NCBI RefSeq assembly: GCF_963853765.1
Contig: NC_088857.1
Coordinates: forward strand, 19,592,001 to 19,656,000
Length of the DNA stretch: 64,000 bases
Reading direction: 5' to 3'
Source: Magallana gigas
Lineage: Eukaryota
The position numbers and the translations under genes were made by a program. How positions within the stretch are numbered: the first letter of the stretch is position 1; the number at the start of each line of letters is the position of its first letter. Below the pieces are notes generated by a model. It searched no databases, had not been told where the DNA came from, and worked only from the letters and a program-made list of their open reading frames with translations. Below are positions 34,864 through 46,197 of this stretch, in pieces.

Positions 34864-35985
34864 GGTGGCTCTATACACCCACAGTTTATTCCAATTTTCA
34901 AATGAAGACCACAAAACATATATATTAACTTATCAAATATTAAAATGATGATATTTTTCAAAAGTCAACTATTAACAAATTGAGAGAATTTTTTTTGTCA
35001 TATGATGGATATTTCCTTTAGAAATCTAAAAAAAAAATATAACCACTCAAAAATGTTATTATTGCATTTTTTTTAGTATTTCCCAAAAACATAATTTTTC
35101 ATATTTTTTTACGCTGTTCACAAATCATCTGAAAAAGCTACTTGATGTTATAAGAAAATGTATTTTAATGTGACTAAAAAAAATTGAATGAAAATCATTG
35201 CAAATAAAAACAAAAGATATTTTAAATTTTATTTGGTATGAAAGTTCCTAAGGTAAGAGTTATCGTTCCTAAGTCCCCAAACACCTTGGGGACTTTTCAT
35301 TTCTGAGTTGAAGAAAATTTCCTAAATATCATGTTGGAATTATAAATACATACATATTTCATTAAAGGCCTATATAAGTGAATATACTCGCTTTAATGCA
35401 AAACTAAGTCAAATAAATAAAGGGGAAAATTAACTAATAGGATTTATGTATCCCAACCTGAGAGAAATTCAAAGCCACCCTCCCATCCCCTTAAGGTGGT
35501 AAGGAACATCTGTCGATATTAATGTGGATTAAAGTATATTATAATTGAAATACTTTGACAGGTTTTCTTTAATAGTATTCCACCAAAAAATACGTTTTAG
35601 GAAATTTTGGAAAGTTGAAAACTGTATCGTCCTCAATGGGATTCGAACCCATGGCCTACAGGTTTGAAGTGAACCCACTAACCCACAGCACTACGCTGTA
35701 TAATGTCGTTGATGGTAAAGAAACTATTTAAAAAATTATACTTGATTTTATTGTTTATTTCGATAAATAATACGACACAACATGAAGGTGTCACATACCA
35801 CATTATATACTTATAAGTAATGAATTTTCCAATTATGAAATTCAATCTATTCACTTAACAAATTTTTCAAAAGAGCGGTCCCCACACAATTCGCCTCAGT
35901 TTAAATCAGCCAGTACCGGAATTTCATGCTTTCAGATTTACTTTTTTGTGTATTGCGCCATCAAAAAGTGGTGTATAGAGCCACT
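34864..35985. mobile_element. Kolobok-like non-autonomous element, copy 1 (TTAA duplication)
   Basis: TTAA|GGTGGCTCTATACAC ... GTGTATAGAGCCACT|TTAA. It is collinear with and highly similar to 44055-45246. TTAA duplication plus TIRs starting with two purines fits Kolobok rather than piggyBac (CCC). Confidence 0.85.
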
Positions 35986-36599
35986 TTAACGGCATAGGGG
36001 AATAAATGATTGCCTCAAAATCAATCAAATATAAGGTACATGTACATGCTTGTTTAAATGTGCATGCCATACACATGTATTAAATCCACTGAACACTAAA
36101 ACTTCCATTAAAAAGAATCTTTATTAAAAATGGACTTTTAAAATGATTAAAATGTACATGTAGATTTATAAATTAAGTAACAATGTAAAATCATATTGCT
36201 TTGTGTTTGAAATATATTAATTTTTAGATTAAAATCAAAAGACAGAATAAAAAGACACAAAATAGACACTCAACATACATAAATTTTGACAGCTACCCTG
36301 TAAGGTTCATCTTACTGGTACAAAATCACTAATTCAGAACAATCAAACACTCATGTACCGGTACATGTAAAAATCACATAAAAAATCACATCTGTTAAAT
36401 ACTGTTCAAAAAATCAATTTTTTTTTTAAAAACCTGAATAATAGAAATTTATATTTTTCAACTTGTTAATCACTCAAACATAGTATGCCACATACTACAA
36501 AAGTCCTCCATGTTGATATGTTTAGACAAAGAATAGGAAAAAGAAAATGGGGTTAATGTTCACAATGGTCAACTGAAACTCGATCTTCTTTGGACTGTG

Positions 36600-36629
36600 T
36601 TACAGCTTGCTAGGGTCCCGCCCGGCTAG
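36600..36629 (-). other. Putative readthrough extension of IDH1 (X-LAGRDPSKL) ending in PTS1
   Basis: The minus strand reads AGC TGA CTA GCC GGG CGG GAC CCT AGC AAG CTG TAA. Confidence 0.8.
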
Positions 36630-39600
36630 TCAGCTGGTTTGTTTCTGGGTCAGCAGCTCCGCAACTTTATCCAGGAACTCAAAGGTGTTGAGGTAGTCTG
36701 ACCTTTGAACACTGAAATACGAAGTCATATGAGGAATTCGGTACCATGGCGATAATGTCATTTATGGATGTATACCGGTATGTATATGTTAGTGCTTTGG
36801 TAATTTATTTCATAGATCAAATGAAGTTTTTTATTTCAGCTATTAATACTAATCAGTACTTCTGTACATGTAAATTGGACCAAAAGAAATGTATGAAATT
36901 TATTTTTGTGAATTTTGATTAAAAATAAATTACCCTGTACTTTCAGATTATAGATCTCTGAAATTTATTTAACTTGAGTAAATCTACTTAAAATATTAAT
37001 TCGCTACGAAGATTTTACAAAATATTCGGCTTTCCACAAAATGACAAAACTCTTACCTATTCATGCCTTTGATACAGATGGCTAGATCTTTGGTCATTAT
37101 GCCTGATTCTATAGTCTCTATGCATGCCCTCTCTAGATTATCAGAGAACTTTTTCAGAGCATCGTTGTTGTCAAGCTTAGCTCTGTGTGCGAGCCCACGT
37201 GTCCAAGCAAAAATGGAAGCTTCAATCACAAAAAAGTCACAACATAAGTGAAGTAAGCTTTATCATAATGTTGAACTTAACTTTCACTCATTCATTCTAA
37301 GCACAGGTTTTTAATCAATGTCTGCATTGGAAAAAAGTAATTTACTAGTGCATGTATTTAATGAAGCCAATCCAAAATTTATTCAAATTTGTTCTTAAAC
37401 AGTGATAATCATTGATCAAAATCATTGAATATCAATAAGTTTAACATGTACATGTATATTGATTCAAATGAACAGATATCTTTCTTTAATAGTGTATCAA
37501 TAGTGTATACCTATGGAGTTTGTTGAAGTTTCGTTTCCTTTCTGATGTTGGCGGAAATGTCTGGTGACGGTTCCATGAGCTGCCTCAGCTTCGATGGTCT
37601 TGCCATCGGGGCAAACCAGTACACTGGTCATCATCCCGAGAGATCCAAAGCCTACAAAAACCAACAACAAGTACATATATGTAGTTGTAATTGTAACTTA
37701 AATGTACGTGTAAATGTACAACACTGAACATCTACACGGTCAAAATTACACAGTAAAAGCCCTACCCTGGTGGGTGCAGACACCTACCCTGAGCTACAGA
37801 GTCGGACTGGACATCTCCATCATAGTTCTTACACGCCCAGACAAATCCTCCCTCAGACTTCATTGCGTAGGCGACCATGTCGTCAATCAGACGGTGCTCA
37901 TACCAAATCTTCTTCTCCTCAAAGGCCTTTTGGTATTGCCTGAAGCAACAGATGTTAATGATTACCTCTGTGTGTTTAATCTAAAGAACATGTGCAGGTA
38001 CATGTACATTTTATTTCCTTATTTTTTTTAAAGTGCTTATTTGTGTTGATATCAATAAGTAAATAAGCTTACTTTTCATAAATCTCTTGGAAAATGTCCT
38101 TGAATCTACCATCATATTTCTTCAGAATTGTGTTCTTTGTGCTAAAAAATGGAAAAGTTATTGGTTAAGTAAAAATGTGGATCAAAATATACTTTTGAAA
38201 AATGTCTATTTTCTAGTTCACACAGTAATAAATAATTGTATTTAGAGAACAATGCTTGCATATCATTATGTAAAATATATTATTAAATAAACAATTTAAT
38301 TAATCCATCCAATGTACCTCAAGTATAATGGCCATTCTTTTTGAAGTGCAAACTGGAATGAACTATGGGCAAATTCTGTAATACTCTGGAATAAAGTTGA
38401 AAATTCTAAAATGTGTTATATCATGCCTTAATTCTGAAATAAAAGCATTAATAATGATTTTAATTACATTGAATTCCATTTATCAATTTTATAATAAATC
38501 TTTTTATTGATCCCAAACAGATACCTTATCGGTGTTGTACATAGCCAAGGCTACACCTCCAGACTCTGTGAAATCAAACACATTGAAGTTTTGTGCCTGA
38601 CTCCCATCTGTTGGTGTAAATTTGAGCTCTAGTTTTCCTGGCCCAGGTACAACAAAATCAGTGGCACGATACTGCAAGCAGAGAAGAACCAAGGTTAAAC
38701 AAAAAACAAAAATGGAGTTTCCAACTACTTTTACAAACTTAAACTGACAACTTCCTCAAATCTGGCACTAGAATAGCCAATATGAGTTTAAAAATTATGG
38801 CCATCACAGATGCACAGTTGAGGCACCTTTCTTGTTTTAAGAATTAGCACGTCAAATAGATAACAGCACTAAATATCGATGATTCAACAGTCCCCATTGA
38901 AACATTTGTGACTTTTCTCTATAAAAGAGCTCTCAGTTTAGTAGCTATAATGCTACTAGTGAATTGAAAACTTTGCAAGAATACATGAGAGGGTCAGGTT
39001 TATAACTGTGCTACATACTAACCTGATCGCCATAAGCATGACGTCCTATCACAATGCTCTTGGTCCATCCTGGGACCAATCGTGGAATGTTTTCGCAAAT
39101 AATGGCTTCCCTAAACACAGTGCCTCCCAATATATTCCTGATGGTTCCATTTGGAGATTTCCACATCTTTTTCAAATTGAATTCTAAAAAAAAATTTGGC
39201 AGAAACAAATTTTATGAATGTATGTATTGAAAAAATAGAAACTCTTACCTTTGGTTTACTGGAGCTCATTTCTTTGAGGAGTAAATGTCATTGTACATGT
39301 AGAATATGTGCAATGTATTAAAAACATTTGTATTTTAATTTGATTTAAAATATTTTTCTTTTAGTAATTTATATACCACTAGATAAATCTTATTCCTGCA
39401 GCTGTAATAAAAATGATACTTGATACTTTTTCTATTGGACTTTGGTGTGTTTTGGTAGTTTTTGGTCCTGACGTTTCAAAAACCGGGCAGCAAGTGAATG
39501 TTCTAATTTGAATTTGATTGGAAATATTTATCTTTGCTGAAGTTTAATCAGTGATTGTCAAGTCTATTAGATACCTACCTTCCACTCTTTTCTCATCAGG

Positions 39601-39711
39601 AGTAATGGTGGCACACTTAATGCCTACATTGTATTTCTTGATGGCATTGGCTGCATCAATGGTCACTGGAATAATTATCAAAGAGTTAACTCCCTTGAAA
39701 TCTGTTAGTAC

Positions 39712-39748
<37 letters not shown>

Positions 39749-41177
39749 AGGAGGAATGGGATACTTTCATTTTTGTGATGACATTACCTTTCAAGATCAA
39801 CAATAAATGAATCCCCATTTCATGTCATATGTACTAATACTGTTGGTTAAGATTAAAATGTTGGCTATATAGTGATCAGAAAGTCTAAAGTTGAGTTTTC
39901 TAAAAAAAAATTTTTAACCTTTATTAAAGTATTTGAAATAAATTATTGCATGTATGATGCATTCATTCAAACAAATTGTCCCATTCAACCTTAATCTCTT
40001 TATATTTACATCTACCAAGTATGATTCCCTCTATTTCTTACGGAAACTTATAGTTAATTCATAGCTCTATAGAAACAGCCAGACTGAAATCTACGCGCCC
40101 CATTTATCGATTGGTCGAAATCTACAGCGGCTGAAACTGACAAGAAAATGACAGGACAAATATCGACACGCCCTGTTTATCGATTGGTCCAAACCTATAG
40201 CGACCTAGGAAAAATCACGGACTGCACGAAATAACCATGACGATGTCAGACTCAAAGGAGACGATTTGGCTGTTTCTTTTAGCTAACTTACTTACGTACA
40301 TTAACAGTAATTAAGTGAATTTTACTTACTTTTCTTAATCAATTTATCAATAAGCTTAAAGAAAGATGTTAATATAAACAATAAAATGCTTTTTTTGATG
40401 ATTCATTTGGGTTATGAAGGTAGTGATCATTGCAGAAAAAATTTACATAACCCACGTTAGCGGGTTATGTATTTTTTCTGCAATGTCACTACCTTCATAT
40501 CCCGAATGAATCACCAAAGAAAGCATTTTATTGTTTAAATATACACAAAGCCAGAGGAAAAACTTAAGTTACTTAACTGTGAAACATTACATAACACCTG
40601 ATTAATGCATGTATTGTGTTTACCCTGATCATCTGTTGCATCACGGTTCTCAATGCCCAGATCATAGGAGTGAAGCTCCAGGTCCACAAACGGGAGAATT
40701 AGTTTCTGCTTGATCAAATCCCAAATTACTCTGTAACAGAAATAATACAAAATCTGGATAAAATGTTTTTTGAGCCAGAAAATGAGAAAAATATATGACT
40801 TGAGAGATAAAGTTTATCCTTAACTATAAACTGTTATGCCACACCAACGAAAGAATGCAAAATCCAGATCTTGAGCAAAATTTTAGATCCGCCCATGAGT
40901 TTTCACATTTTTGACAGAATAGATTGACGGTATAATTGTTGCAATTATGTAACAATAATTTTATTTTATGCAGTTCAGAATTTATTGTAGTATAAGACGC
41001 TCCGCCCACATAACTTACCGAGTCATTTCATCCCCCTGCATTTCAACAACTGGACCGCCTGTGAAGTAAAAAACAAAACGCCCATATCATAAACAAAATC
41101 TATCATATTACGCGTTTAATTAATTATATGCACATAAAACACTTGAATTTTCCTTTGGTACCTTTGATTTTCCCCAT
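36630..41177 (-). CDS. IDH1: Cytosolic NADP-dependent isocitrate dehydrogenase, 410 aa
   Basis: 12 exons: 41162-41177, 41019-41058, 40624-40730, 39579-39665, 39023-39183, 38525-38671, 38318-38385, 38073-38141, 37788-37939, 37511-37651, 37057-37219, 36630-36711. Total 1233 nt. Motifs: [94 protein letters not shown]. No mitochondrial presequence. Confidence 0.97.
40040..40537. mobile_element. Repeat element ending in a long palindrome (Crypton-like non-autonomous element?) in IDH1 intron 3
   Basis: Near-perfect inverted repeat with arms at 40375-40453 and 40462-40537 and an 8-nt loop. ATTTATCGATTGGTC-like internal repeats occur at about 40100 and 40175. The family assignment is from recall only. 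Confidence 0.55.
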
Positions 41178-41520: not shown

Positions 41521-44500
41521 ATGAAGACAGCCGCAGTTTTACTTGCAGAAGGTGCAGAAGAAATGGAAACTGTTATTTCAGTCGACGTTTTGCGGCGTGG
41601 AGGCGTATGCTTTTTTTGCAGTTTATTTTCAGTTAAAAAATAAATGTCATAACATAATTACATGTATGAAAATTTTATTATATATCACATTCTATATAGA
41701 TTTTTTTTTATAACCGAGGACGAATATATATATACGCCCTTGTTATATCATACATTTTATGACACCGAAGTTTTGATATTATAGCACAAGGGCTTGCATA
41801 GTTAAAATCATTATAGTTAAAAATAAAGTTGAGAACCAATGGCTTTTAATTCCTGTATCAAATTTCAAGATAAACGCCAGTTTCATCAGGTGTACTATGA
41901 CCTTGCAAAAAGTTCCATATATTAATGTCATATTCCCTATAATTTCTGATTCCCTATTACTTCTCCAGCTAGGCAACATTAATGGAAATCGCCCACTTTT
42001 ATTGATATCAACATTGAATATATATATATATATATTTTAGATTGATGTAAAGTTAGTAGGGGTGCAAGGAAGTGAAGCAGTGCTTTGCAGCAGAAATGTG
42101 AAAATTGTCCCTGATACAACTCTTGCAGAGGCATCAAAGTCTGCACCTTATGATGTAGTGGTGCTACCAGGAGGAGCAAATGGAGCCAAGAATCTCGCAG
42201 CTGTAAGTTTCTTAGACTAATGTTTAAGTGTTAAAAATTGAGATGAGACAATCTAATTAAAATCAGATGTTAGATACACTCGTTTACTAGCTTCACAAGT
42301 TGACATTTAATACATGTACATCTCATTGAGGTTCAAGTCAGAGTGGCCTTTCAGCTTGAGCTAACCAATGAAATTAATTGTTCTGAATCTTTGCATAAGA
42401 ATTTGGAACTTCTCAGGGTTTTTTTGGCATACATAGATGACCAAGGTGTTCTAAGAGAATGAAAACAAAACTTGCATGTAGCAAGTAGACAAATTATTTG
42501 TGGAGCACATGGCTCAGTGGTCATAGGCGTTAGGCCAGTAACAGTGCTGGTTCAAACCCTGCTGTAGTCACTTGATGTTGTGTGTTGTGCACTTAGACAA
42601 GGAACTTTATCTACATTGTCACAGTCCACCCAGCTGAAAATGGGTACCGGCTTATGTTTGGAGTTAACCTGCGATGGACTGGTGTCCCATCCAGGGGAAG
42701 TCAGTGACTCTCATCCAAAAACCGGGGATAAACATGGGCCTGATGCATCTTTATGTCACAGAGAAGGATTTAACTTTAACTAAGCAAGAAGACAAGTGGA
42801 TCTTAAGTCCAATTTTAATTAGATTAGAAAACAGAATTTAAGATTTCATATTTTCATGGAAATTAGTTGCATCAAACTGTTCAGAAACATTTCTGCTTAT
42901 ATATGGAAATTATTTTTGAATCCTTATGAATATATGATCAAATCAGCTCAACCCCTAGGCAATTGAACTTTATGTACATGTAGGTACCATTGGCAAAGAA
43001 CGATCTATATATGTAAATTGAAATTAGTGGCATCTATCAGTATTCTGATTAAATTTTTGTTTTGTTTTCAGTCTGCTGAAGTAAGAAATCTTTTGGAAAC
43101 ACAAGTGAAAAATAACAAACTAGTAGCAGCTGTGTGTGCAGGTATGTGCATAAAATATGCATGTAAAACAAAATTAATCTCATGAGTGAGCATAATGTTT
43201 ACCGATACATTCTTTTTGTCGTCATTGTCTAATCTTGGGCAATGACATTCAATTCATTCCCTGACCAGTTTGGAGTTAGGTTAATTCCTAATGCTTTATA
43301 TATGCAGACATAAATTTAATAAAAATCTTGTTTTACTGTTGTATGAGTATGACTGAAATGTTAGCACTTGATTTTCAATGTTTTCCAGGTATATGCTTTT
43401 CCTCAAGGTTGCAGTAAAATTCAGTTTAAAACTATTATAGAATGCAAACATACAAATATTTTTTGTGCCTTTGAAAACTGGTATTTATCATTCATTTACC
43501 GAGTACTTTTGTTTAAAGCACCCATTGCACTGGTAAGCCATAATATCAAACCAGGATCTACAGTGACCTCTCACCCCTCAGTCAAAGGCAAAATGGAGGA
43601 AGGTAGAAAAAGCTTCTTTAGTTTCTGTGGAATCATTGGAATTCATGGCGGCTCAATTTTCACTGTATTTGTGGATAGCTGCCCTCTCCCAAGAATTTAT
43701 ATCCTCCACGAAAACAAATTTGAAAGAATTTTCTTACTGAAATTCAAAAACTTGACGCATCCACAAAATTATACATCCTTAAGAATAAGCAAAAACATAC
43801 AATCCATGAAAATTTGTCCCCACAAATTCAAATGATTCCATTAAACAGGCATTAGATCTACTTTTTTGTTTTTCAAAAGCTTTAACTTTGTTATTTTTGC
43901 TGATATGGTTACACATGAAAATACCTGTACAATATATATCATGAAGCAAATATAATTTTTTTTTACATGTAAATTGTTTGATTATGTAAACTTTTGACTT
44001 ACAGTGAATTACAGAATACTGGTAGAGTTTTCAATAACTTGCTAGATTGCTTAAGGTGGCTCTATACACCCACAGTTTATTCCAATTTTCAATAGAAGAC
44101 CACAAAACATATACTTATCAAATATTAAAATGACAATAGGGATACTATAGGTATTTTTAAAGAATTTTTTAATGTTTTTTCGTGTTTTTGTAAAATATTT
44201 TTTAAAAAGACAGCTATCAACAAATTGAGAGAAATTATTTTGTCATATGATGAATATTTCCTTCGGACACATAAAAAAAATATAACACTTCTTAACATTC
44301 AAAAATGTTATTATTGCAATTTTTCTTAGTATTTCCCCAAAACATAATTTTTCATATTTTCTTACTCTGTTGACAAATCATCTGAAAAAGTTGCTTGATG
44401 TTATAAGAAAATGTATTTTAATAAATGTGACATAAAAAATTGAATGAAACCCATTGCAAATAAACACAAAAAATATTTTAAATTCTATTTGGTATGAAAG

Positions 44501-46197
44501 TTCCTCATGTAAGGGTTATCGTTCCTAAGTCCCAAGGCCCAAACAGCTTGGGGACTTTTCATTTCTGAGTTGAAGAAAATTTCCTAAATATAATGTTGGA
44601 ATGATAAATACATACATATTTCATTATAGACTTTGCCCTGTATAAGTGAATATATTCGCTTTAATGTAAAACTAAGTAAAATAAATAAAGGGGAACATTG
44701 ACTAGGCTAATACGATTTATGTATCCCAACTTGAGAGAAATTCAAAGCAACCCTCTCATCCCCGTTAGGTGTCTATATTAATGTGCATTAAAGTATATTA
44801 TAATTGAAATATGTTCACCTGTTAAGAATTTTCTTACACGGTATTCAACCAAAAATGCGTTTTAGAAATTTTTGGAAAGTTAAAAAATTTATGGTTCTCA
44901 ACGGGAATCGAACTCATGACCTACTGGTTTGTAGTGAACCCACTAACCCACTGCGCTACGGTGTAACATATCAATGATACTAAAGAAACTCTTTAAAAAT
45001 TTATACTTGATTTTATTGTTTATTTTGATAAATAATACAACACAACGTGAAGGTGTCACATACCACATTACTTGTAAGTAATGAATTTTCCAACTATCAA
45101 ATTAAATCTATTCATTTAACAAATTTTTCAAAAGAGCGGTTCCCATACAATTCGCCTCAGTTTAAATCAGCCAGTACCGGAAATGCATGTTTCCAGATTT
45201 ACTTTTTTGCGTACTGCGTCATCAAAAAGTGGTGTATAGAGCCACCTTAATAGGGTATTGAATTTGGTCAGCAAGGTATCACATTTAATTGGTTTAAATC
45301 TTGGTCATGTGATTACTCAGGTATAACAGCAAGAAAGTGAGTTATATCTAGTAAATATTTACACATTTTGAGCTTTTCTTGTTGAGAATATTTTCTCTTT
45401 GCTACATGTATCCTATATTTTTGCTATAAAAGTTTGAACCAATTAGGCAGTCACAGCACAAAAGCACTATTAGTGCTATATGTTGCACCAGGAGTTGAGG
45501 AACCTATTAATGATTTTGCTGGAAAAAATGATTGTTTGTTTCTTCAGAAAAGTCTTTTAAATTACCCGGTACATTAAATTTAAAAAAAAAAAAATTCAAA
45601 GTTACTCCCAGCAGAATTGATGCTCTAGAATCCAGCGCTGTCCAGGTGAACACTATTTTTAAAAATCTGTAAATAGAAATAACTAGCAATAGGAGAGAGT
45701 GTTCTAGAGACTTTCTTTGTGCAATCAATCTGATTAAAATCAGATCCTCGATTTGCTCCTTGTTTCTCTATTGTTGCATATAGCAACAATAAAAAGACAA
45801 GGTGTGGATCAAGGATCTGATTTTTTGTGCAATATGAATGGGTTGAATGTAAAAAAAACAATCTACACTTGAGTAACCGCAGGACCTAGAATTAAACCTA
45901 ATGTGATACCTTGCTAACCAAATTAAATACCCTATTGAATAATCTATTGAAAACTCTGTAATTAGCTGTATAAAATATGCAAGTTTGTAAGAAATAGTTT
46001 CTGAAATGTAGCACCGATCGGTACATCCTATTACAGGGGGCTACAAATACAGTGAGGACCGTGTAGTGACTGACGGCAAGCTGATCACCAGTAGAGGGCC
46101 GGGGACAACTTTTGAATTCGCACTGAAAATAGTGGAGACTCTTGAAGGCAAAGAGAAGGCAGATTCACTTGTTCAGCCCATGTTGCTGAAATTGTAA
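41521..46197 (+). CDS. PARK7: DJ-1/PARK7 (class I glutamine amidotransferase-like glyoxalase and redox sensor), 186 aa
   Basis: Exons 41521-41604, 42041-42202, 43072-43141, 43519-43602, 46037-46197 (561 nt). Motifs: [19 protein letters not shown] (Glu18), [16 protein letters not shown] (Cys106), TSHP (His126), LITSRGPGT. Confidence 0.96.
42493..42782 (+). mobile_element. tRNA-derived SINE in PARK7 intron 2
   Basis: A box TGGCTCAGTGG (42510-42520), B box GGTTCAAACCC (42549-42559), body motifs AAATGGGTACC and AACCTGCGATGGACT...CCCATCCAGGGG, and a (TTTAAC)n tail. A candidate 13-bp duplication AGCAAG(T/A)AGACAA lies at 42480-42492 and 42783-42795. Confidence 0.85.
43623..43830. mobile_element. 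MITE of the CTGTGGAATCATT...AATGATTCCA family
   Basis: Inverted termini. A related copy lies at about 52287-52492. Confidence 0.55.
44055..45246. mobile_element. Kolobok-like non-autonomous element, copy 2 (TTAA duplication), in PARK7 intron 4
   Basis: TTAA|GGTGGCTCTATACAC ... GTGTATAGAGCCACC|TTAA, with perfect 15-bp TIRs. Confidence 0.88.

What the first reader, a model, noticed from the sequence alone, without database searches (positions are those of the whole stretch)
36600..36632. Hidden peroxisomal IDH1 isoform: TGA-CTAG readthrough stop followed by an in-frame SKL (PTS1)
Seen: the IDH1 CDS ends ...KQTS-TGA, immediately followed by CTAG and then GCC GGG CGG GAC CCT AGC AAG CTG TAA. Readthrough would add X-LAGRDPSKL. 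The extension is GC-rich inside an AT-rich UTR and ends in the optimal PTS1 exactly at the next stop. Established: UGA-CUAG is the strongest metazoan readthrough context and generates peroxisomal MDH1x and LDHBx in mammals, and vertebrate IDH1 carries a constitutive C-terminal AKL that this protein's normal end (-QTS) lacks. Inference: this mollusc makes cytosolic and peroxisomal NADPH-producing IDH from one gene by ribosomal readthrough. Standard annotation would miss this. I recall a similar prediction for insect IDH but cannot verify it here.
Basis: partly seen in the sequence, partly recalled or inferred. Interest (0 to 1): 0.92.

Follow-up and report, generated by a model that had tools for sequence, protein, structure and literature searches.

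The report
Oyster IDH1 leaky stop hides peroxisome tag
An oyster's cytosolic NADP-isocitrate dehydrogenase gene ends in the leaky stop context UGA-CUAG followed by nine in-frame codons ending in the peroxisome tag SKL; the arrangement is real and conserved in many invertebrates, but the same trick was already predicted for insect and sea-hare IDH in 2014.

Summary
On the minus strand the IDH1-type gene ends ...KQTS-TGA(36632-36630)-CTAG, then 9 codons (LAGRDPSKL) and TAA (36602-36600).

Evidence that the gene and transcript are as described:
- I rebuilt an intact gene of 12 coding exons and 410 aa with no mitochondrial presequence.
- The only paralogue in the genome is IDH2-like and has no PTS1.
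- RNA runs confirm the last intron and show the extension is contiguous in the mRNA.
- The stop is not changed at or above the 10% listing threshold in the reads. The only variant in the extension is synonymous.

Chance is excluded. Only 1 of 7,925 stop triplets in the window combines TGA-CTA with a PTS1 placed just before the next stop. The same TGA-CU(A) plus terminal SKL/AKL/ARL recurs in 8 of 11 other orthologous lineages, including the bryozoan Bugula. Their linkers differ in sequence and length (7-16 codons) but always keep the frame.

It is not new in kind. Stiebler et al. 2014 (PLoS Genet, Fig. S3B) list TGACTA plus PTS1 for IDH of Drosophila, Apis, Tribolium and the mollusc Aplysia.

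My verdict is a new member (a bivalve orthologue) of a published, still untested class, of moderate interest.

The parts
36633..41177 (-). IDH1-type cytosolic NADP-isocitrate dehydrogenase gene: 12 coding exons, 11 GT-AG introns, 410 aa. Exons on the minus strand: 41177-41162, 41058-41019, 40730-40624, 39665-39579, 39183-39023, 38671-38525, 38385-38318, 38141-38073, 37939-37788, 37651-37511, 37219-37057, 36711-36633. The N-terminus is [19 protein letters not shown], with no presequence.
   Evidence: model and intact ORF; TIGR00127 on four exons; best PDB matches are cytoplasmic IDH1
36712..37056 (-). last intron (345 nt, GT..AG)
   Evidence: the joint 36711->37057 appears in all four RNA runs
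36633..36711 (-). coding part of the last exon (...[26 protein letters not shown])
36630..36632 (-). annotated stop codon TGA, proposed to be leaky
   Evidence: no variant reached the 10% listing threshold here in the RNA runs; the five bases TGACT are invariant in the 8 aligned orthologues
36626..36629 (-). CTAG directly after the stop, the readthrough-promoting context UGA CUA(G)
   Evidence: context requirements from PMC4207609
36603..36629 (-). 9-codon in-frame readthrough extension LAGRDPSKL (GC 0.70)
   Evidence: the only polymorphism is 36624 G>T on the + strand, i.e. GCC>GCA, which is synonymous
36603..36611 (-). SKL, the canonical PTS1 tripeptide, at the very end of the extension
   Evidence: PTS1-type tripeptides sit at the same place in 8 of 11 other lineages
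36600..36602 (-). second in-frame stop, TAA
35986..36599 (-). rest of the 3' UTR (about 470-610 nt; AT-rich; many SNPs and indels between individuals)
   Evidence: contigs run unbroken from 36711 down to 36429, 36177 and 35986. Strand-specific raw reads reach about 36130. About 16 SNP sites and 4 indel sites lie in 36330-36599.

Best explanation
The window carries the oyster orthologue of cytosolic NADP-dependent isocitrate dehydrogenase (IDH1).

Most ribosomes stop at UGA and release a 410-aa cytosolic enzyme ending in -QTS. A minority decode the UGA with a near-cognate tRNA, because UGA followed by CUA(G) terminates poorly. Those ribosomes add one residue plus LAGRDPSKL. The new C-terminus is a type-1 peroxisomal targeting signal, so this 420-aa form should be bound by PEX5 and imported into peroxisomes. 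There it would regenerate NADPH, for example for oxidation of unsaturated fatty acids.

Shown here:
- the sequence arrangement;
- the gene's identity and integrity;
- the presence of the extension in mature mRNA;
- the lack of any other NADP-IDH gene with a PTS1;
- strong purifying conservation of stop, context, frame and terminal tripeptide across distant invertebrates.

Inferred: that readthrough occurs at a useful rate in oyster cells, and that the extended protein is imported.
For: 1. Anatomy: TGA-CTAG, 9 in-frame codons, SKL, TAA.

2. Conservation. The table gives the end of the coding sequence, the stop with the bases after it, the extension and the next stop.

| Locus | CDS end | Stop + context | Extension | Next stop |
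|---|---|---|---|---|
| L005 (89% identical exon) | ...QKQSS | TGA CTAG | LDKDSSKL | TAA |
| L008 | ...KKMGSS | TGA CTAC | LLNTSIAKL | TGA |
| L010 | ...KKMGSS | TGA CTAG | LENNARL | TAA |
| L013 | ...KKQSAK | TGA CTAG | LGHMAKL | TAA |
| L011 (Bugula neritina) | ...KLKMAN | TGA CTAA | LNVAISSKL | TAA |
| L014/L015 | ...RQKLQ | TGA CTT | LHPAERSKL | TGA |
| L016/L017 | ...KKLSQ | TGA CTAG | LGNTESKL | TAA |
| L089 | ...KKLAKL | TGA CTAC | LPRGDGSNSDIIPSKL | TGA |

The bases TGACT are invariant in the nucleotide alignment, while the linker is unalignable and differs by whole codons only.

3. Chance: the background frequency of each feature is about 0.3%, and the joint frequency about 1e-5 per stop.

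4. RNA:
- The last intron is confirmed in 4 runs.
- Transcript contigs are unbroken through the stop and the extension.
- Coverage is strand-specific.
- No change at the stop reached the 10% listing threshold.
- All 6 variants in the two last coding exons and the extension are third-position changes. The one in the extension (GCC>GCA) and the one in the last exon (GAC>GAT) are synonymous.
- The UTR beyond the second stop carries about 16 SNP sites and 4 indel sites in 270 nt.

5. Need: the genome has only two NADP-IDH genes. The other (C5:22.6 Mb) is IDH2-like and ends ...RETQEKM, with no PTS1. IDH1 itself has no presequence.

6. Mechanism precedent (PMC4207609):
- UGA CU(A) is sufficient for readthrough in Ustilago and HeLa cells, and it drives peroxisomal import of LDHB and MDH1.
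- The same paper predicts this for IDH of Drosophila, Apis, Tribolium and Aplysia.
Against: - There is no direct measurement. No Ribo-Seq run was listed, and no proteomics or reporter data exist.
- Raw-read depth over the stop is only 6-9, and contigs drop rare variants, so low-level RNA editing of the stop cannot be excluded.
- Nine codons are too few for a codon-substitution test, and the polymorphism argument rests on a single synonymous site in the extension.
- Three of 11 other lineages lack the arrangement. L009 has TGA CAAT and then QS. Lamellibrachia (L012) has TAA CTGC and then LQP. L049 ends in AQL followed by TAA.
- The residues just before SKL (Asp at -5, Pro at -4) are not the basic or hydrophobic ones said to favour PEX5 binding. 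That rule is from my own knowledge, and no PTS1 predictor was available.
- No RNA structure stands out downstream of the stop (z = -0.22). Efficiency would therefore rest on the short context alone.
Confidence: 0.8

Rival explanations
1. The extension is exposed by a different route than near-cognate readthrough: A-to-I editing of UGA to UGG, selenocysteine insertion, alternative splicing, or a stop-loss allele. The PTS1 would still be used, but the recoding mechanism would differ.
For: Raw RNA depth over the stop is only 6-9 reads, and contigs hide rare variants, so editing of a few percent would go unseen. From my own knowledge, RNA editing that recodes stops exists in some molluscs.
Against: - No T>C (+ strand) at 36630, nor any other change at the stop, reached the 10% listing threshold in four RNA runs. 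The only joint in the stretch laid is the expected last intron.
- No SECIS or any other credible Rfam match lies in 35000-37000.
- What is conserved across 8 other lineages is exactly CU(A) after UGA. That context matters for termination efficiency, not for editing or splicing.
Confidence: 0.07
2. Readthrough happens and the extension is under selection, but the extended form is too rare to matter, or it serves something other than PEX5-dependent import, such as turnover or another interaction.
For: Import was not tested. The residues before SKL are acidic or proline. Three lineages do without the extension. One lineage (L089) already ends in AKL before the leaky stop, so there the extension is not needed just to supply a tripeptide.
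Against: The only constrained residues of the extension are the terminal tripeptide, and it always falls within the PTS1 consensus (SKL five times, AKL twice, ARL once) directly before a stop. Vertebrate and fungal IDH carry a PTS1 at the regular end, and fungal enzymes are shown to be peroxisomal (PMC4207609).
Confidence: 0.1
3. Coincidence: a random 3' UTR happens to have CTA after TGA and an SKL before the next in-frame stop, without function.
For: With a joint frequency of about 1e-5 per stop and tens of thousands of genes, about 0.3 such genes per genome would be expected by chance. One instance alone would not be significant.
Against: It falls on the one enzyme family for which a PTS1 is expected, and it recurs in 8 of 11 other lineages whose linkers share no sequence. 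Frame-preserving length changes only are not what neutral UTR does. The UTR beyond the second stop carries four indel sites within the species.
Confidence: 0.03

Closest known systems
Predicted readthrough-PTS1 isoforms of NADP-IDH in Drosophila melanogaster, Apis mellifera, Tribolium castaneum and Aplysia californica (Stiebler et al. 2014, PLoS Genet, PMC4207609, Fig. S3 and Table S2)
   Same: Same enzyme, same TGA CTA context, and a short in-frame extension ending in a PTS1 (SHL, SKY, ARL; SKL in Aplysia). These are also predictions only.
   Different: This is a bivalve. The extension is 9 codons, against 6 to 19 in the published cases, with unrelated linker sequence. This report adds mRNA evidence, a paralogue inventory and further lineages, including a bryozoan.
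Mammalian MDH1x and LDHBx (Stiebler 2014; Schueren 2014, cited; Hofhuis 2016, cited)
   Same: UGA CUA(G) readthrough unmasks a C-terminal PTS1 on a cytosolic redox-shuttle dehydrogenase, giving dual cytosol/peroxisome localisation.
   Different: These are different enzymes (NAD-linked). They have been demonstrated experimentally, and the oyster case has not.
Fungal cryptic PTS1 by readthrough or alternative splicing (Ustilago maydis PGK, TPI, GAPDH; Freitag 2012, cited)
   Same: A short UGA CU motif plus a PTS1 in the extension.
   Different: These are glycolytic enzymes, with independent origins. Fungal IDH carries its PTS1 in the normal reading frame.
Pre-duplication yeast IDP2: a cryptic PTS1 in the 3' UTR reached by a +1 frameshift (Yanagida et al. 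2015, PMC4526572)
   Same: Same enzyme family, and a peroxisomal signal hidden just after the stop codon.
   Different: The recoding is a frameshift, not in-frame readthrough. Here the PTS1 is in frame 0 and the stop context is UGA-CUA.
Vertebrate IDH1 with a constitutive C-terminal PTS1 (human AKL, chicken and zebrafish PKL)
   Same: The orthologous enzyme, dual cytosolic/peroxisomal, in an NADPH shuttle.
   Different: The signal is on every molecule, so the split depends on signal strength and not on the frequency of recoding.

Membership tests
Functional translational readthrough that unmasks a PTS1 (MDH1x / LDHBx / insect-Idh type) | UGA stop followed by CU, ideally CUA(G) | tested here: met
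   TGA CTAG at 36632-36626. The bases TGACT are invariant in 8 aligned orthologues. Motif requirements come from PMC4207609.
Functional translational readthrough that unmasks a PTS1 (MDH1x / LDHBx / insect-Idh type) | In-frame extension without a stop, ending in a PTS1 tripeptide at the extreme C-terminus | tested here: met
   LAGRDPSKL and then TAA. The background frequency of such an ending is 0.35%.
Functional translational readthrough that unmasks a PTS1 (MDH1x / LDHBx / insect-Idh type) | Stop context, frame and PTS1 conserved in orthologues while the linker is free to vary | tested here: met
   8 of 11 other lineages have the arrangement. 3 lack it.
Functional translational readthrough that unmasks a PTS1 (MDH1x / LDHBx / insect-Idh type) | The extension is part of the mature mRNA directly after the stop, with no splice or edit producing it | tested here: met
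   contigs of three RNA runs and strand-specific raw reads are continuous across 36711-36429 and beyond. The only joint is the last intron. No variant at the stop reached the 10% listing threshold (depth 6-9).
Functional translational readthrough that unmasks a PTS1 (MDH1x / LDHBx / insect-Idh type) | Measurable readthrough (reporter, ribosome footprints or peptide across the stop) | not testable with these tools
   No Ribo-Seq run was listed. No proteomics tool is available.
Functional translational readthrough that unmasks a PTS1 (MDH1x / LDHBx / insect-Idh type) | PEX5/PTS1-dependent import of the extended form | not testable with these tools
   The tools do not accept a protein read through a stop, so no complex prediction was attempted.
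Eukaryotic NADP-dependent isocitrate dehydrogenase, cytosolic IDH1 type (TIGR00127) | Match to the family profile along the protein | tested here: met
   Four exons match TIGR00127 at profile positions 84-137, 137-186, 232-283 and 330-382 (E 2e-31 to 5e-18). Each exon alone is below the whole-protein cut-off, as expected for a fragment. The assembled ORF is 410 aa against a 409-position profile.
Eukaryotic NADP-dependent isocitrate dehydrogenase, cytosolic IDH1 type (TIGR00127) | Cytosolic rather than mitochondrial paralogue: no N-terminal presequence, closest to IDH1 | tested here: met
   The N-terminus is [19 protein letters not shown]. PDB matches to cytoplasmic IDH1 outrank those to mitochondrial IDH2. 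A separate IDH2-like gene lies at C5:22.6 Mb.
Eukaryotic NADP-dependent isocitrate dehydrogenase, cytosolic IDH1 type (TIGR00127) | Conserved substrate- and metal-binding motifs intact | tested here: met
   [37 protein letters not shown] and NYDGDVQSD are all present in the assembled ORF. Assigning them to catalytic residues rests on my knowledge of human IDH1.
Selenoprotein (UGA read as selenocysteine) | SECIS element in the 3' UTR | tested here: not met
   An Rfam scan of 35000-37000 at E<=1 gave only a sub-threshold snoRNA-like match and no SECIS.

The most novel reading that the evidence does not exclude
The UGA-CU(A)-short linker-PTS1 module of IDH1 may be a single ancient recoding event, not repeated convergence. 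It would have been inherited by insects, gastropods, bivalves, bryozoans and further invertebrates, lost in some lineages, and replaced by a constitutive PTS1 in vertebrates. That would make it one of the oldest conserved functional readthrough events in animals. The same oyster genome may also send cytosolic MDH1 to peroxisomes in this way (UGA-C followed by PSPKL). Both the NADPH and the NADH shuttle enzymes would then be supplied by stop-codon leakage.
Probability: 0.3. Interest if true: 0.55.

Novelty: new member of a known kind. Interest (0 to 1): 0.35.

Why it matters
Standard annotation stops at the TGA, so oyster peroxisomes would appear to lack an NADPH-regenerating IDH. Recognising the extended isoform corrects the predicted peroxisomal proteome of bivalves, animals in which peroxisome proliferation is used as a pollution marker (from my own knowledge).

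The comparative data gathered here show the module across several distant invertebrate lineages. This strengthens a 2014 prediction that has never been tested experimentally in any animal. It also offers a compact, strongly conserved test case for functional readthrough outside mammals: 33 nt, one enzyme and a clear localisation read-out.

It is not a new principle.

Tried and rejected
- The search of protein representatives with one exon returned only fragments and chimeric representatives. It gave no usable full-length mollusc IDH1, so full-length named orthologues could not be fetched. I did not paste a spliced protein.
- Several look-ups gave no usable DNA. P0154 and P0171 came from sample files that were too large. 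L004, L006 and L007 ended before the last exon.
- The metagenome scan with an exon alignment was swamped by bacterial IDH. Only L049 and L089 were informative, and L043 had no last exon in reach.
- Selenocysteine is rejected because no SECIS was found.
- A readthrough-stimulating RNA structure is rejected. The fold is no better than shuffles (z = -0.22), and the GC-richness of the extension is not shared by orthologues.
- No Ribo-Seq run was listed.
- The scan's own notebook held nothing on this locus or on readthrough in this genome.
- No PEX5-peptide complex prediction was run, because the tools do not take a protein read through a stop.
Full report
**Observation**

The finding's coordinates are exact, but the gene is on the minus strand. 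The reverse complement of 36719-36540 reads ...[23 protein letters not shown], then TGA (36632-36630). Next come CTA GCC GGG CGG GAC CCT AGC AAG CTG (36629-36603, LAGRDPSKL) and TAA (36602-36600). The base after CTA is G, so the context is UGA-CUAG. The extension is 70% GC, against 48% in the last coding exon and 30% in the following 300 nt of UTR.

**What the gene is**

Exon-sized matches on the minus strand between 36633 and 41177 hit TIGR00127 (eukaryotic NADP-isocitrate dehydrogenase) in the right order. Cytoplasmic IDH1 structures rank ahead of mitochondrial IDH2.

Using tblastn anchors and GT-AG sites, I assembled 12 coding exons with 11 canonical introns. The ORF is uninterrupted and 410 aa long. 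It starts [19 protein letters not shown], like cytosolic IDH1, with no presequence. The conserved substrate and metal motifs are intact.

The genome is 564 Mb in 29 contigs and comes from an oyster, judging by the run labels. It holds only one other NADP-IDH locus, 3 Mb away on the same contig. That locus is IDH2-like and ends ...FLQAIRETQEKM followed by two stops, with no PTS1. If oyster peroxisomes contain an NADP-IDH, it must come from the gene in this window, whose regular end (-QTS) is not a PTS1.

**Is it more than chance?**

- The window holds 7,925 stop triplets, counting all frames and both strands.
- 24 of them (0.30%) are TGACTA.
- 28 of them (0.35%) open a frame that ends in [SAC][KRH][LM] directly before the next stop.
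- Exactly one, this one, has both. The product of the two frequencies is about 1e-5.

A genome with tens of thousands of genes would yield a fraction of one such case by chance. A single instance would therefore be only suggestive. The comparative evidence decides the matter.

**Orthologues**

I searched with the penultimate exon and fetched the DNA around exon-sized hits. One metagenome scan added two more loci. The table shows the end of the coding sequence and what follows it.

| Locus | CDS end | Stop + context | Extension | Next stop |
|---|---|---|---|---|
| window | ...KQTS | TGA CTAG | LAGRDPSKL | TAA |
| L005 (89% identical exon) | ...KQSS | TGA CTAG | LDKDSSKL | TAA |
| L008 | ...MGSS | TGA CTAC | LLNTSIAKL | TGA |
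| L010 | ...MGSS | TGA CTAG | LENNARL | TAA |
| L013 | ...QSAK | TGA CTAG | LGHMAKL | TAA |
| L011 (bryozoan Bugula neritina) | ...KMAN | TGA CTAA | LNVAISSKL | TAA |
| L014/L015 (marine plankton metagenome) | ...QKLQ | TGA CTT | LHPAERSKL | TGA |
| L016/L017 | ...KLSQ | TGA CTAG | LGNTESKL | TAA |
| L089 | ...KLAKL | TGA CTAC | LPRGDGSNSDIIPSKL | TGA |

Three lineages lack the arrangement:
- L009 has TGA CAAT and then QS.
- The annelid Lamellibrachia satsuma (L012) has TAA CTGC and then LQP.
- L049 ends in AQL followed by TAA.

So 8 of 11 other lineages share UGA-CU(A) plus a PTS1-type tripeptide placed exactly before the next stop. In the nucleotide alignment the five bases TGACT are invariant. 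The linker cannot be aligned and varies from 7 to 16 codons, always by whole codons. This is the signature of selection on the stop context, the frame and the terminal tripeptide, with a free spacer. It is what a PTS1 on a flexible tail requires.

**Transcript evidence**

Four RNA runs labelled with the same organism were laid on 35700-37300.
- All four show the joint 36711->37057 (GT..AG on the minus strand), and no other joint appears.
- Transcript contigs continue unbroken from 36711 down to 36429, 36177 and 35986.
- The poly(A) raw reads are strand-specific, with depth of about 7-11 down to about 36130.
- The extension therefore lies immediately after the stop in mature mRNA. Within the stretch laid, no alternative 3' exon joins the penultimate exon.
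- No difference at the TGA, the CTA, the SKL codons or the TAA reached the 10% listing threshold.
- All six variants in the two last coding exons plus the extension fall on third codon positions. The single one in the extension (36624, GCC>GCA) is synonymous, as is the one in the last coding exon (36696, GAC>GAT).
- The 270 nt of UTR after the second stop carry about 16 SNP sites and 4 indel sites.

This polymorphism pattern is consistent with coding constraint on the extension. With one site it is only a hint.

**Other routes considered**

- Selenocysteine: no SECIS or other credible Rfam match lies in the 3' region.
- RNA structure: no fold stands out downstream of the stop (z = -0.22), and the GC-richness of the oyster extension is not shared by orthologues. 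The short context is the only conserved signal.
- A-to-I editing of the stop: not seen, but depth (6-9 reads) cannot exclude a few percent. The conservation of CU after UGA argues for termination leakage, not editing.

**Mechanism**

UGA followed by CU(A), with G at +4 further helping, is sufficient for readthrough in Ustilago and HeLa cells. It delivers LDHB and MDH1 to peroxisomes through a PTS1 in the extension (PMC4207609).

By analogy, most oyster IDH1 terminates at -QTS and stays cytosolic. A small fraction gains one residue plus LAGRDPSKL and is imported by PEX5, providing NADPH inside peroxisomes. From my memory of Hofhuis 2016, the residue inserted at UGA is Trp or Arg. The readthrough rate and the import are inferred, not shown.

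**Comparison with what is known**

The idea is published. Stiebler et al. 2014 state that D. melanogaster NADP-IDH has UGA CU and a predicted PTS1 in the extension. Their Fig. S3B lists TGACTA plus PTS1 for Drosophila (SHL), Apis (SKY), Tribolium (ARL) and the mollusc Aplysia californica (N16-SKL, score +9.7). It contrasts these with the constitutive PTS1 of vertebrates and fungi.

A 2016 review repeats only the Drosophila prediction. I found no experimental test of any animal IDH readthrough, and no mention of oysters or bivalves. Yeast pre-duplication IDP2 reaches a cryptic PTS1 by a +1 frameshift, which is a related but different trick.

The oyster gene is thus a new member of a known, predicted kind. 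The additions here are the bivalve and bryozoan instances, a wider survey, the mRNA evidence and the paralogue inventory.

**Verdict**

Novelty is low to moderate.

Noticed in passing
G000:C6:3144349-3144543 (-), locus L018 minus strand: The cytosolic malate dehydrogenase (MDH1-like) gene of the same genome ends ...MSACQD TGA CCA TCA CCT AAA CTG TAA. That is a UGA-C stop followed by a 5-codon in-frame extension, PSPKL. PKL is the weak PTS1 found at the regular end of chicken and zebrafish IDH1. It may be a second readthrough-PTS1 candidate, parallel to mammalian MDH1x.
   Followed up: partly
L089:845 (metagenome contig Ga0247645_1011362): In one unnamed relative, IDH1 already ends in AKL. It is still followed by TGA CTAC and a 16-codon in-frame extension ending in SKL, so a PTS1 sits both before and after the leaky stop.
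   Followed up: no
window 41177 (-) versus 41521-46197 (+): A DJ-1/PfpI-family gene (three exons hit PF01965, only one above the whole-protein cut-off) is transcribed divergently from IDH1. The two start codons lie about 340 bp apart, which suggests a shared bidirectional promoter for two redox-related genes.
   Followed up: partly
window 35545-35810 and 44804-45080: Two related repeat copies have similar short ORFs. The one just downstream of the IDH1 3' UTR has very high RNA depth on both strands and many loose read ends. It is probably a dispersed SINE-like element and not part of the IDH1 transcript.
   Followed up: no
L009:1604, L012:4105, L049:4823: Three IDH1 orthologues lack the leaky-stop module: L009 (TGA CAAT), the annelid Lamellibrachia satsuma (TAA CTGC) and L049 (regular end AQL, then TAA). 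How, or whether, these species supply peroxisomal NADP-IDH is open.
   Followed up: no
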